Shown here piece by piece: positions 42,857-62,421 of a stretch of DNA of 64,000 nt. Source of the DNA: Macrostomum hystrix (Eukaryota > Animalia > Platyhelminthes). The translations under genes were made by a program, and so were the position numbers. The notes below the pieces were generated by a model, which did not search any database, was not told the DNA's origin, and was given only the letters and a program-made list of their open reading frames with translations. The stretch is taken from NCBI GenBank assembly GCA_950097015.1, contig CATNEN010000030.1, positions 2,790,001-2,854,000 of the forward strand, given 5' to 3'. Position 1 is the first letter of the stretch. Each line of letters opens with the position of its first letter.

Positions 42857-43015
42857 ATGCCAACCACGTGCGGCTTTCCCAACTGCAAGTTCCGCTCTCG
42901 CTACCGTGGCTCAGACGACAATCGGCACTTCTACCGGGTGCCAAAGAAGCCTGCGGTGCTGCGCGAGCGCTGGCTGGAGGCCATTGGTCGCACCGAGCAG
43001 ACAATTGTCAGTCAG
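42857..43015 (+). CDS. CtBP: THAP-CtBP exon 1 (first half of THAP: [20 protein letters not shown])
   Basis: Two Cys ligands plus the conserved P and W; phase-0 donor CAG|GTGAGC. Confidence 0.93.
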
Positions 43016-61000: not shown

Positions 61001-62421
61001 AGTTTCCTCCGCATCTTTGCACTCCAGGCGTCCTGAAGGACTGCCCGAACGTGGTAGCCACCCCAGGCTCGGCCTTCTACAGCGACCAGGCCTGCGCGGA
61101 GCTGCGCGAACTAGCCGCCGAGGAGATCCGGCGCGGTCTGGCCGGCCGAGTGCCCGACAGCCTGAAGTTCTGCGTCAACCCGGAGCCGCCGGCGGTCATC
61201 GCCTGCCCCGCCAAGAGGCCGCGCGTCGCTGGCCCGACACGGCCGATGTCCGCCACCTCGACCGGAGCGCCCACCGCAGTCGGCGTCGACAACTTCGGTA
61301 GCGGCGCCAGCACCGGCGGCGGCGAGTTCCTTCATCAGGCGGCGAAGCGGGCGGCTGCGGTTGCTGCGGCGACCGCTGCTGCCGCCGCTGCGGCGTCCTC
61401 CGCCGGGCCCGGCTCCGCCTGTGCGCCATCAAAGGCGCCTCACAACTTCGGTGTACCGCCGATTCGGCTCAACTTTGGTAAGCTTCTGATCCCTATGATC
61501 CTTAGAATCCCAAATCAGTCCTTCTAATCCCAAATCAATCCTTCTAATCCATAGTCAATCCTTCTAATCCCAAATCAATCCTTCTAATCCCGAGTCAATC
61601 CTTCTAATCCCGAGTCAATCCTTCTAATCTCAAATCAATCCTTATAATCCCAAATCAATCCTTCTAATCCCTAGCCAATCCTTAAAATCCCAAATCAATC
61701 CTTAGAATCCCAAATCAATCCTTCTAATCCCAAATCAATCCTTCTAATCCCAAATCAATCCTTCTAATCCTAAATCAATCCTTCTAATCCCTAGTCAATC
61801 CTTATAATCCCAAATCAATCCTTATAATCCCAAATCAATCCTTCTAATCCCAAATCAATCCTTCTAATCCCAAATCAATCCTTCTAATCCCTAGTCAATC
61901 CTTCTAATCCCTAGTCAATCCTTATAATCCCAAATCAATCATTATCCCAAATCAATCCTTCTAATCCCAAATCAATCCTTCTAATCCCAAATCAATCCTT
62001 ATAAACCCGAGTCAATCCTTCTAATCCCGAGTCAATCCTTCTAATCCCGAGTCAATCCTTATAATCCCAAATTCATTTTTATCCCCATTGGTCTTTATGT
62101 TCCTCAATCAATCCTTTGGATCCCCGATTGATCCTTCTAATCCCCAATCACTCATTTCAATCCCAAGTCGATCCTTCTGATTCCTAATCAATTAATTTTT
62201 TCCATTTAATTCTTGGTAATAATCCATAGCAACTAAGAGTCACGTGACCCTTGTGAACCAATCGCATTGTCGCAGGCTACGTGGACTCATTCCCCCAGTC
62301 CAGCCTGGCCTCTCTAATGCTGCCCGGAGCCAGCTTCGACCCGATGCACGCAGCAGCGGCACTCAGCTCGGTGGCCCCGCTGCACTATGACTCATTCGGC
62401 AAGAAGGACATCCTCATCTGA
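42857..62421 (+). CDS. CtBP: THAP domain-containing C-terminal binding protein (CtBP), 9 coding exons, 686 or 708 aa
   Basis: Exons 42857-43015, 45971-46214, (46849 or 46915)-47261, 47753-47897, 51168-51377, 59215-59442, 59519-59650, 61028-61477, 62276-62421; all GT-AG with matching phases. CtBP hallmarks [48 protein letters not shown]. Confidence 0.95.
43490..43820. repeat. Minisatellite, 41-bp unit TTATCACAGTCGGTTGGCCTTAACCTCTAAACCCTAAACCC
   Basis: ~7-8 copies in CtBP intron 1. Confidence 0.93.
44108..44290 (+). mobile_element. tRNA-derived SINE fragment
   Basis: TAACTCATCGG A-box, GGAGTTCGAATC B-box, TTTGTGTCCTTGAGCGAGACA core motif. Confidence 0.7.
45971..46214 (+). CDS. CtBP: THAP-CtBP exon 2 (second half of THAP: [19 protein letters not shown], then linker)
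   Basis: CxxHF ligands complete the C2CH finger; acceptor TTACTTCAG. Confidence 0.92.
46283..46815. repeat. Minisatellite, ~73-bp unit filling CtBP intron 2
   Basis: GCTATTAAATTGATTAACACCCACTCGGGAAGGGACACCCACCCCACACCGCGATGCGTCACATTTTAAAGCA, ~7 copies. Confidence 0.95.
46849..47261 (+). CDS. CtBP: THAP-CtBP exon 3 (Ala/Pro linker and start of the substrate-binding domain)
   Basis: Two in-frame acceptors (exon start 46849 or 46915); ends HEK|GTACGC. Confidence 0.9.
47753..47897 (+). CDS. CtBP: THAP-CtBP exon 4
   Basis: [23 protein letters not shown]; canonical splice sites. Confidence 0.92.
48350..48910. repeat. Minisatellite, 24-bp (2x12) unit TAGAATCGTAGCAGGAATCGCATC with higher-order variants
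   Basis: Tandem unit; variant block ATGAAATCTATTCGTGG occurs twice. Confidence 0.93.
50190..51010. repeat. Minisatellite, 44-bp unit AATGACCGCGTTTCTAAGAAATTGAACTTTCAGAAAATAGATTT with a recurring variant monomer
   Basis: Variant CGGAAAAATGGACGTTATAT recurs at ~50315, 50580 and 50757. Confidence 0.95.
51168..51377 (+). CDS. CtBP: THAP-CtBP exon 5
   Basis: [36 protein letters not shown]. Confidence 0.92.
51440..51930. repeat. Minisatellite, 33-bp unit CCTGAAGCCACTAGCCTGAACAACCAATCTATC
   Basis: ~14 copies, starting ~60 nt after the exon 5 donor. Confidence 0.95.
54078..54530. repeat. Degenerate ~10-bp tandem repeat GAGCATCCTT
   Basis: Tandem unit read directly. Confidence 0.9.
55490..55690. 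repeat. Polypyrimidine low-complexity tract (CCTTCTCCCC-like)
   Basis: Nearly purine-free on the + strand. Confidence 0.8.
56295..56702. repeat. Tandem repeat of GTTCCTAGAAA(N4-5)
   Basis: ~15-16-bp monomers with alternating linkers. Confidence 0.92.
57308..57965. repeat. Minisatellite, 16-bp unit AACTTCAGGGAAAGGA (block 1)
   Basis: Tandem unit. Confidence 0.94.
58800..59075. repeat. Minisatellite, 16-bp unit AACTTCAGGGAAAGGA (block 2)
   Basis: Same unit as 57308-57965. Confidence 0.93.
59085..59200 (-). mobile_element. Truncated SINE body (second family) abutting the CtBP exon 6 acceptor
   Basis: GTGTGxACATCxGxCCxGACTTT..ATCxTCAGGCAGT..GTAAATTGCA..AAGCCCC aligns with 36690-36805. Confidence 0.65.
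59215..59442 (+). CDS. CtBP: THAP-CtBP exon 6
   Basis: [26 protein letters not shown]. Confidence 0.92.
59519..59650 (+). CDS. CtBP: THAP-CtBP exon 7
   Basis: [23 protein letters not shown]. Confidence 0.9.
59665..60990. repeat. Minisatellite, 20-bp unit CAGTTTCCACAGTGTCTTCT, filling CtBP intron 7
   Basis: ~65 copies. Confidence 0.97.
61028..61477 (+). CDS. CtBP: THAP-CtBP exon 8
   Basis: [33 protein letters not shown], then NLS-like PAKRPR and a poly-Ala tail. Confidence 0.9.
61505..62185. repeat. Minisatellite, 20-bp unit AATCCCAAATCAATCCTTCT, in CtBP intron 8
   Basis: ~30 copies. Confidence 0.95.
62276..62421 (+). CDS. CtBP: THAP-CtBP terminal exon 9
   Basis: Phase-1 acceptor TGTCGCAG; open frame [17 protein letters not shown] with coding-like GC3. 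Confidence 0.7.

What the first reader, a model, noticed from the sequence alone, without database searches (positions are those of the whole stretch)
42857..62421. THAP-CtBP fusion that has lost its whole dehydrogenase catalytic triad but kept the NAD-binding motif
Seen in sequence: a C2CH THAP finger split over exons 1-2 splices in frame to a complete CtBP core. Against human CtBP1 (recalled), catalytic R266 (NTARGG) reads NTCSAA, E295 (DVHESEP) reads DLPNRCS, and H315 (TPHAAW) reads TPGSAF. Substrate-contact residues are also changed (RIGSG to QIGPG, YHT to WSS), and the tetramer Trp318 is Phe. The Rossmann GxGxxG (GFGRVG), the acidic YDP and the PXDLS-cleft segment ([19 protein letters not shown]) are intact. 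Established: THAP-CtBPs were first described for C. elegans CTBP-1, whose N-terminus (recalled [36 protein letters not shown]) is nearly identical to this one. Inference: a DNA-binding, NAD(H)-sensing pseudo-enzyme corepressor in a probable flatworm, more degenerate than the nematode protein.
Basis: partly seen in the sequence, partly recalled or inferred. Interest (0 to 1): 0.78.

Follow-up and report, generated by a model that had tools for sequence, protein, structure and literature searches.

The report
Flatworm THAP-CtBP lacking catalytic triad
This flatworm (Macrostomum) gene encodes a DNA-binding form of the CtBP gene-silencing protein that keeps its NAD-binding and partner-binding sites but has lost all three residues needed for enzyme activity. 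The fusion itself is old and widespread in animals, and several roundworms have lost the same residues.

Summary
A nine-exon, all GT-AG gene (42857-62421, + strand, 686 aa) joins a C2CH THAP finger in frame to a complete CtBP core. Against human CtBP1 the triad reads R266->Ser, E295->Cys, H315->Gly in an ungapped alignment. GFGRVG, D204, D290 and the PXDLS-cleft residues A52 and V66 are kept.

The interpretation needs trimming.
- THAP-CtBP is not a nematode speciality. The same THAP exons sit on CtBP proteins of an annelid, a hemichordate, echinoderms and amphioxus, all with an intact triad.
- W318->Phe and Y76->Trp are the normal invertebrate states, not decay.
- C. elegans CTBP-1 already lacks two triad residues. 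C. bovis, Bursaphelenchus, Aphelenchoides and Globodera/Heterodera lack all three.
- Parasitic flatworms carry THAP proteins whose CtBP part has decayed further, losing GxGxxG as well.

The closest database protein is a truncated Macrostomum lignano model with the same joins of exons 1-5. THAP and core are 99% and 96% identical to it, the linker 70%, so both domains look constrained.

Most likely this is a catalytically dead, NAD(H)-binding, DNA-binding corepressor. No RNA run was listed, so splicing is unconfirmed. Whether Macrostomum also has a canonical CtBP could not be tested. The scan's notes held no earlier CtBP finding.

The parts
42857..43015 (+). Exon 1: start codon and first half of the THAP zinc finger (C5 at 42869-71, C10 at 42884-86)
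   Evidence: Pfam THAP 24.1 bits against a cut-off of 23.9. 43 of 53 residues identical to PDB 2jm3, E 2e-29. GT donor at 43016. Homologous genomic ORFs in many species break at the same Q|GT position.
45971..46214 (+). Exon 2: second half of THAP (C57 at 45980-82, H60 at 45989-91; THAP ends about 46075) and the start of a basic, Ser-rich linker
   Evidence: Matches 2jm3 residues 56-91, E 5e-12. AG acceptor and GT donor; ends in phase 1.
46915..47261 (+). Exon 3: Ala/Pro/Thr-rich linker, then the start of the CtBP core ([12 protein letters not shown] from 47145; PXDLS-cleft A52 equivalent at 47220-22)
   Evidence: Alignment to CtBPs. The linker is 69.7% identical to M. lignano P0002, with 18 gap columns; the core is 95.6% identical.
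47753..47897 (+). Exon 4: substrate-domain segment (V66 equivalent at 47753-55; H77->Ser at 47786-88; R97->Gln at 47846-48; S100->Pro at 47855-57)
   Evidence: Pfam 2-Hacid_dh 24.1 bits, just under the 24.6 cut-off for this 48-aa piece. Alignment. The same derived residues are present in P0002.
51168..51377 (+). Exon 5: end of the substrate domain and the first two glycines of the Rossmann GxGxxG
   Evidence: Runs on from exon 4 and into exon 6 without a gap in the alignment to CtBPs.
59215..59442 (+). Exon 6: NAD-binding domain (GFGRVG completed at 59215-59225; D204 equivalent at 59277-79; the [12 protein letters not shown] loop)
   Evidence: Pfam 2-Hacid_dh_C 52.3 bits against a cut-off of 25.1. 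Alignment.
59519..59650 (+). Exon 7: carries the R266 position (Ser, 59542-44), D290 (kept, 59614-16) and the E295 position (Cys, 59629-31)
   Evidence: Ungapped phmmer alignment to human CtBP1 chains 1mx3 and 9wrj. Pfam 2-Hacid_dh_C 25.3 bits. Multiple alignment.
61028..61477 (+). Exon 8: carries the H315 position (Gly, 61066-68) and the W318 position (Phe, 61075-77), the end of the core (CVN at about 61179), then an Ala/Pro-rich C-terminal tail
   Evidence: phmmer to CtBP1 and CtBP2 chains, E 8e-15. Alignment.
62276..62421 (+). Exon 9: last 48 codons of the C-terminal tail and the TGA stop (62419-62421)
   Evidence: AG acceptor in the right phase, and an open frame to the stop. It has no homology support, so it is the least certain exon.

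Best explanation
The gene encodes a THAP-CtBP, a transcriptional corepressor that carries its own sequence-specific DNA-binding domain. Proposed mechanism:
- The N-terminal C2CH THAP zinc finger binds DNA.
- The CtBP body binds NAD(H) through an intact Rossmann site and oligomerises.
- The N-terminal hydrophobic cleft binds PXDLS-motif partners.
- It cannot act as a 2-hydroxyacid dehydrogenase, because the acid/base His, its Glu partner and the substrate-binding Arg are Gly, Cys and Ser.

Shown here: the domain architecture, the residue states, and conservation of both domains against a second Macrostomum copy.
Inferred: DNA binding, NAD(H) binding, oligomerisation, repression and lack of catalysis.

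In evolutionary terms it is the flatworm representative of an old bilaterian THAP form of CtBP. Its dehydrogenase body has been released from catalytic constraint, as has happened repeatedly in nematodes and more severely in parasitic flatworms.
For: Architecture and frame.

Triad S/C/G, with A52, V66, GxGxxG, D204 and D290 kept.

Constraint. Against M. lignano P0002, THAP is 98.9% identical, the core 95.6% and the linker 69.7% with 18 gap columns. The derived WSS and QIGPG residues are shared.

THAP conservation. The THAP domain is 82% identical to the annelid and 75-79% to nematode, hemichordate and echinoderm proteins, while the core is only 46-56% identical to anything. Annelid-versus-Lingula cores are 86.5% identical. 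The end branch is 2.2-2.7 substitutions per site against a median of 0.12.

The same architecture occurs in annelid, hemichordate, echinoderm, amphioxus and nematode proteins.

Function in C. elegans. CTBP-1a needs its THAP cysteines, and THAP alone partly rescues (bioRxiv 10.1101/2020.06.09.143248).

Earlier scan notes report PLDLS-bearing proteins in this genome (not checked).
Against: - No transcript evidence: no RNA run was listed. The only Macrostomum protein in the databases stops after exon 5, so the join of exons 5 to 6 across a 7.8-kb intron rests on reading frame and homology.
- NAD binding is inferred from motifs. The loop after LHC differs from canonical CtBP.
- The very long branch could also mean loss of function of the core.
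Confidence: 0.72

Rival explanations
1. The gene is a decaying duplicate. Macrostomum also has a canonical CtBP, and this THAP-bearing copy is on the way to becoming a THAP-only DNA-binding factor. Its CtBP body would then be a relic that no longer needs NAD or PXDLS partners.
For: - The end branch is about 20 times the median.
- Neodermatan flatworms have THAP proteins whose CtBP part is barely recognisable. Echinococcus has GLDPIG in place of GxGxxG and a scrambled PXDLS segment. Trematodes fall under the Pfam cut-off or give no hit.
- In C. elegans the THAP domain alone partly rescues, and a cleft mutant still rescues.
Against: - The frame is intact over nine exons.
- A52, V66, GxGxxG, D204 and D290 are all kept.
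- The core is 95.6% identical between the two Macrostomum copies, against 69.7% for the linker.
- No second CtBP locus has been seen, though none could be looked for.
Confidence: 0.17
2. Gene-model artefact: the THAP exons (1-2) and the CtBP exons (3-9), or exons 1-5 and 6-9, belong to different transcripts.
For: No RNA reads could be laid. Introns of 3.0, 3.3 and 7.8 kb are full of minisatellites. The M. lignano model P0002 ends after exon 5.
Against: - P0002 independently joins exons 1-5 in the same way.
- GFGRVG is completed exactly across the exon 5/6 junction, in matching phase.
- There are no gaps against CtBPs at any junction.
- The same THAP+CtBP architecture is annotated in five other phyla.
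Confidence: 0.06
3. It is still an active dehydrogenase that uses substitute catalytic residues.
For: An Arg (R481) lies one residue before the E295 position. The NAD site is intact.
Against: The general acid/base His is Gly, and there is no His within three residues of it (TPGSAF). The substrate-binding residues R266, R97, H77 and S100 are all changed. All 20-odd canonical CtBPs examined keep R/E/H.
Confidence: 0.03

Closest known systems
C. elegans CTBP-1a (F49E10.5), the founding THAP-CtBP (Nicholas et al. 2008, J Mol Biol 375:1, cited; THAP structure PDB 2jm3)
   Same: N-terminal C2CH THAP finger: 81% identical in exon 1 and 75% over 89 residues to C. remanei. Linker, CtBP core with PXDLS cleft and GxGxxG, and a divergent C-terminal tail. 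The intron after ...VSQ is at the same place. Part of the triad is missing (H/V/H).
   Different: C. elegans keeps H315; the window protein keeps none of the three. R97, H77 and S100 are also changed here. The cores are only 49% identical.
THAP-bearing isoforms of canonical CtBP in the annelid Lamellibrachia, hemichordate Glandiceps, echinoderms Acanthaster and Anneissia, and amphioxus (P0230, P0219, P0223, P0224, P0226)
   Same: The same THAP N-terminus (82% identical in the annelid, the closest of all) fused to a CtBP core. In Glandiceps it is one isoform of a locus that also makes a THAP-less CtBP (P0147).
   Different: Their cores are canonical: R/E/H intact, NEHNHH loop, about 80% identical to each other. 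The window core is 50-54% identical to them and has no triad.
Human/vertebrate CtBP1 and CtBP2 (PDB 1mx3, 2ome and others)
   Same: The D-2-hydroxyacid dehydrogenase fold segments, the PXDLS cleft (A52, V66), GxGxxG, D204 and D290, with no gaps across the catalytic region.
   Different: No THAP domain in vertebrates. R266, E295 and H315 are present there and absent here.
Neodermatan flatworm THAP proteins (Echinococcus 'Zinc finger C2CH type' / 'C-terminal-binding protein 1' P0042 and P0068; Schistosoma, Clonorchis, Echinostoma, Calicophoron, Paragonimus and Cichlidogyrus models)
   Same: The same THAP finger (87-91% identical in exon 1, RVPKKP type) followed by a region derived from the 2-Hacid_dh_C domain.
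   Different: Their CtBP part has decayed much further. The PXDLS segment is unrecognisable, GxGxxG is lost, and in trematodes it falls under the Pfam threshold. Orthology to the window gene is not shown.
Triad-less nematode CtBPs (C. bovis, Bursaphelenchus, Aphelenchoides, Globodera/Heterodera) and plant ANGUSTIFOLIA
   Same: All three catalytic residues are replaced while the fold and, in the nematodes, GxGxxG, D204, D290, A52 and V66 stay. Aphelenchoides even has the same S/C/G letters. PMC9907507 notes that ANGUSTIFOLIA lacks the triad.
   Different: They belong to different phyla and the losses are independent. ANGUSTIFOLIA has no THAP and acts in the cytoplasm.

Membership tests
THAP-CtBP corepressors (CTBP-1a type) | N-terminal C2CH THAP zinc finger of the CTBP-1 type | tested here: met
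   Pfam THAP above the cut-off. E 2e-29 and 5e-12 to PDB 2jm3. C5, C10, C57 and H60 are present.
THAP-CtBP corepressors (CTBP-1a type) | CtBP-type core with the PXDLS-binding cleft ([12 protein letters not shown]...VAFCDAQ; A52, V66) | tested here: met
   Alignment with 30 CtBPs; A52 and V66 are invariant. Binding itself was not tested.
THAP-CtBP corepressors (CTBP-1a type) | THAP and CtBP parts on one polypeptide | tested here: inconclusive
   In-frame GT-AG joins and an independent M. lignano model with the same joins of exons 1-5. No RNA run was listed, so there is no read evidence.
THAP-CtBP corepressors (CTBP-1a type) | Transcriptional repression and DNA binding | not testable with these tools
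   Needs reporter, ChIP or SELEX experiments.
NAD(H)-binding D-2-hydroxyacid dehydrogenase fold (Pfam PF02826/PF00389) | Rossmann GxGxxG plus the acidic residue that binds the adenine ribose (D204), and D290 | tested here: met
   GFGRVG, YDP and LD are kept. PF02826 scores 52.3 and 25.3 bits for exons 6 and 7. PF00389 scores 54 bits on P0002. Actual NAD binding was not tested.
Catalytically competent CtBP / D-2-hydroxyacid dehydrogenase | Arg-Glu-His catalytic triad (R266, E295, H315 of human CtBP1) | tested here: not met
   Ser453, Cys482 and Gly502 in ungapped alignments. All canonical CtBPs examined have R/E/H.
Canonical bilaterian CtBP orthologue (single protostome CtBP gene of PMC9907507) | It is the only CtBP locus of the genome and groups with spiralian CtBPs | tested here: inconclusive
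   The best tree puts it beside the nematodes (94/80, not starred). Placement with Spiralia is not rejected (p-AU 0.188). The rest of the genome could not be searched.

The most novel reading that the evidence does not exclude
Flatworms turned the ancestral THAP isoform of CtBP into a protein in which only the THAP finger and the NAD/partner-binding scaffold are under selection. They then let the dehydrogenase body decay stepwise: triad lost in free-living Macrostomum, Rossmann motif and PXDLS cleft lost in cestodes, and the body almost unrecognisable in trematodes.

If this locus is Macrostomum's only CtBP, an animal would run all CtBP functions without any dehydrogenase chemistry. That would contradict the published statement that the triad is kept in all bilaterians except nematodes. 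It would also give a natural answer, in a species that can be genetically manipulated, to the old question of whether CtBP catalysis matters.
Probability: 0.3. Interest if true: 0.6.

Novelty: new member of a known kind. Interest (0 to 1): 0.42.

Why it matters
Whether CtBP's dehydrogenase chemistry has any role in repression is still open; the abstract of PMC10245716 says in vivo substrates are unknown. A 2023 survey states that the triad is conserved in all bilaterians apart from nematodes, which lost one residue (PMC9907507).

This locus, and the nematode sequences aligned here, show that complete loss of the triad has happened several times. In each case the NAD-site residues and the PXDLS-cleft residues A52 and V66 stay invariant. 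That argues that NAD binding and scaffolding, not catalysis, are what selection keeps in THAP-CtBPs.

Macrostomum lignano is a laboratory flatworm, so the prediction can be tested there. The THAP finger is also strikingly conserved (75-82% identical across phyla), which points to a conserved DNA target that nobody has defined outside C. elegans.

Tried and rejected
1. RNA evidence. The look-up of sequencing runs on 42750-48000 listed no RNA run, so read laying could not be used.

2. Word-index protein search. I used the open frame 59500-61524 (exon 7, intron 7, exon 8) with the region restricted to exon 8. It returned 860 candidates and none scored.

3. Exact look-up of the exon-1 ORF: not on record.

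4. Locus L001 (ENA ERZ22147071), which encodes a 96%-identical exon 1. It holds only exon 1 within 10 kb, GC is 37% and the organism is unknown. I did not walk further along it.

5. Looking for a canonical Macrostomum CtBP. The best 120 hits to the P0002 core held no other Macrostomum protein. The scan's notes hold none. Atlas searches gave only generic clusters. So this is untested, not absent.

6. Specific kinship of the window core to the neodermatan THAP proteins. phmmer scores are no higher than from canonical CtBPs, so orthology is not shown.

7. Structure prediction.

8. I considered reading W318F and Y76W as decay and rejected it.

9. Literature. No paper found describes a flatworm THAP-CtBP or a CtBP pseudoenzyme.
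Full report
**What is there**

Reading the + strand from 42857 gives a nine-exon gene: 42857-43015, 45971-46214, 46915-47261, 47753-47897, 51168-51377, 59215-59442, 59519-59650, 61028-61477 and 62276-62421. 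Every intron is GT...AG and the phases match. The CDS is 2061 nt, 686 codons plus TGA. All eight introns carry minisatellites, which explains the gene's 19.5-kb span.

**THAP part**

Exon 1 passes the Pfam THAP cut-off. It is 43/53 identical to the solved THAP domain of C. elegans CTBP-1 (PDB 2jm3, E 2e-29). Exon 2 continues that match to the end of the solved domain (E 5e-12). The zinc ligands C5, C10, C57 and H60 are all present.

**CtBP part**

Exons 3-8 align to CtBPs from end to end, with no gap at any exon junction. Exon 6 scores 52.3 bits on Pfam 2-Hacid_dh_C.

Against human CtBP1 chains, exons 7 and 8 align without gaps:
- NTARGG reads NTCSAA (R266 -> Ser453).
- DVHESEP reads DLPNRCS (E295 -> Cys482).
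- TPHAAW reads TPGSAF (H315 -> Gly502, W318 -> Phe505).

A 32-sequence alignment puts the same residues in those columns. Kept residues:
- GFGRVG, completed across the exon 5/6 junction.
- D204 and D290.
- The PXDLS-cleft residues A52 and V66.

Also changed are R97->Gln, S100->Pro and H77->Ser.

Phe at 318 and Trp at 76 are what fly, Lingula, octopus, annelid and amphioxus CtBPs have.

**Whose genome**

Earlier notes of the scan call this genome a Macrostomum-like flatworm. An exhaustive HMMER search with exon 1 found 63 proteins. The best long one, P0002, is Macrostomum lignano A0A1I8IUV3. It is a 424-aa model that joins the equivalents of exons 1-5 exactly as here and then runs into the intron.

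Identity to the window protein, by region:

| Region | Identity to P0002 |
|---|---|
| THAP | 98.9% |
| Core | 95.6% |
| Linker | 69.7%, with 18 gap columns |

The derived WSS and QIGPG residues are shared. P0002 is either a homeologue or the orthologue in a sister species. Either way, both domains have been held constant while the linker drifted. That is the only evidence for selection I could obtain.

No protein in the databases covers the part of a Macrostomum THAP-CtBP that carries the triad. The triad loss is therefore not visible in public protein sets.

**How widespread the fusion is**

A search with the C. bovis protein showed the architecture THAP + 2-Hacid_dh + 2-Hacid_dh_C in several groups:
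- many nematodes;
- the annelid Lamellibrachia;
- the hemichordate Glandiceps, where it is isoform X1 of a locus whose X2 lacks THAP;
- two echinoderms;
- amphioxus.

The window's THAP domain is 82% identical to the annelid's, 79% to the hemichordate's and about 75% to the nematodes'.

Genomic ORF fragments from many assemblies break at the same ...Q|GT position, so the intron inside the THAP domain is shared. The fusion is an old bilaterian form of CtBP. Nicholas et al. 2008 defined the group (cited).

**How unusual the triad loss is**

The triad states found:

| Group | R266 / E295 / H315 |
|---|---|
| All canonical CtBPs and all non-nematode THAP isoforms examined | R/E/H |
| Ascaris, Anisakis, Brugia, Thelazia, Steinernema, Acrobeloides, Necator, Pristionchus, Enterobius | R/E/H |
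| C. elegans and C. remanei | H/V/H |
| Mesorhabditis | A/A/H |
| Strongyloides and Parastrongyloides | S/E/N |
| Panagrellus | R/S/R |
| C. bovis | E/I/R |
| Bursaphelenchus | S/-/R |
| Aphelenchoides | S/C/G |
| Globodera and Heterodera | D/I or A/Q |

The C. elegans letters are the same in the alignment supplied with PMC9907507. That paper's text says nematodes lost one residue and all other bilaterians keep the triad.

Complete loss is thus recurrent in nematodes. The window gene is the first case I can point to outside them in which the rest of the core is intact. A52, V66, D204 and D290 are invariant in every one of these proteins, and GxGxxG is kept in nearly all.

**Other flatworms**

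The THAP search also returned neodermatan proteins:
- Echinococcus (631 aa, annotated 'Zinc finger C2CH type' and, in one assembly, 'C-terminal-binding protein 1');
- Schistosoma, Heterobilharzia, Clonorchis, Echinostoma, Calicophoron and Paragonimus;
- the monogenean Cichlidogyrus.

Their THAP exon 1 is 87-91% identical to the window's. Their CtBP part has decayed:
- Echinococcus still passes Pfam 2-Hacid_dh_C (41 bits) but has GLDPIG for GxGxxG and an unrecognisable PXDLS segment.
- Trematodes fall below the cut-off or give nothing.

The window core is no closer to these than canonical CtBPs are, so orthology is not shown.

**Rate and placement**

The window core is 46-56% identical to every other CtBP, whereas annelid versus Lingula is 86.5%. 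Its end branch is 2.2-2.7 substitutions per site against a median of 0.12. The best tree puts it beside the nematodes (94/80, not starred). A position with spiralian CtBPs is not rejected (p-AU 0.188), and long-branch attraction is a live worry.

One feature is shared with nematodes. The loop after LHC reads PDLPGTRGL here and PLTDETRHL-like in nematodes. It reads xLNEHNHHL in all canonical CtBPs, including the THAP isoforms. I cannot say whether that is shared ancestry or convergence.

**Mechanism**

The best reading is a catalytically dead THAP-CtBP:
- THAP binds DNA.
- The Rossmann site binds NAD(H) and drives oligomerisation.
- The cleft recruits PXDLS partners.

In C. elegans the THAP cysteines are needed for CTBP-1a function, and the THAP domain alone partly rescues. 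This fits the much tighter conservation of THAP than of the core.

Rivals are a decaying duplicate, a gene-model artefact and a still-active enzyme. They are weighed in their own sections.

**What could not be done**

- The rest of the genome was out of reach, so a canonical paralogue can neither be shown nor excluded.
- The spliced protein has no reference, so it was neither folded nor searched as a whole.

**Verdict**

The gene is a genuine, probably functional THAP-CtBP of a Macrostomum flatworm with no catalytic triad.

It is a new member of a known family rather than a new kind of protein. The family's founding member already lacks two triad residues, and several nematodes lack all three.

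Its value is comparative. It extends recurrent triad loss, with a retained NAD site and cleft, to a second phylum. It also corrects a published generalisation.

Noticed in passing
window 59500-61524 (+): Exon 7, the whole of intron 7 (a 20-bp x 66 minisatellite, 59666-60988) and exon 8 lie in one open frame of 675 codons. An ORF-based gene caller would output a long false protein with repeat-encoded filler between two real CtBP segments.
   Followed up: partly
window 46872-46914 (+): An ATG at 46872 lies in frame with exon 3, just upstream of its acceptor ([14 protein letters not shown]...). A transcript starting in intron 2 could give a THAP-less isoform, as CTBP-1b does in C. elegans and isoform X2 in Glandiceps. 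No RNA data were available to test it.
   Followed up: no
window 42822-42856 (+): A polypyrimidine tract followed by AG (42843-42844) sits 12 nt upstream of the start codon. This is a possible spliced-leader acceptor, given that earlier notes report SL trans-splicing in this genome.
   Followed up: no
window 43491-43810, 46287-46816, 48355-48913, 50208-51028, 51426-51929, 54078-54527, 56299-56703, 57361-57966, 58819-59070, 61498-62192: Every intron of the gene holds one or more minisatellite arrays (periods 10-177 bp). The intron-1 array has a 41-bp unit containing CCCTAAA, a telomere-like TTTAGGG repeat.
   Followed up: partly
window 59304-59330 region (exon 6, residues about 423-432); proteins P0205, P0128, P0044: The loop after LHC reads P....TR.L in the window protein and in nematode CtBPs. 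It is the invariant xLNEHNHHL in all canonical CtBPs, including the THAP isoforms of annelid, hemichordate, echinoderm and amphioxus. This is either shared ancestry or a convergent return to the general 2-hydroxyacid dehydrogenase motif.
   Followed up: partly
protein P0232 (Aphelenchoides besseyi CTBP-1): This nematode has the same three replacement residues at the triad positions as the flatworm (Ser, Cys, Gly), evidently by convergence.
   Followed up: partly
proteins P0198 and P0193; supplement file 5 of PMC9907507: C. elegans and C. remanei CTBP-1 read NTSHAG and DVHDSVRF, so both R266 and E295 are replaced. [quoted passage not shown]
   Followed up: yes
proteins P0067 and P0068 (Echinococcus granulosus XP_024348418.1, KAH9287220.1): The decayed THAP-type protein is annotated 'C-terminal-binding protein 1' in one assembly. 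It is unclear whether the E. granulosus 'CtBP' used in PMC9907507 (XM_024493547.1) is this gene or a separate canonical one.
   Followed up: no
L001:10127-10294 (ENA ERZ22147071, contig ctg31305l): An exon-1 homologue, 96% identical by phmmer, lies in a 1.76-Mb contig of an unidentified organism (GC 37%). No further CtBP exon was found within 10 kb downstream.
   Followed up: partly
window 44100-44175 (+), intron 1: A stretch with a tRNA-like T-arm motif (GGTTCGAATC-like, 'gagttcgaatctcacc') suggests a tRNA-derived SINE. ARAGORN called no tRNA there.
   Followed up: partly
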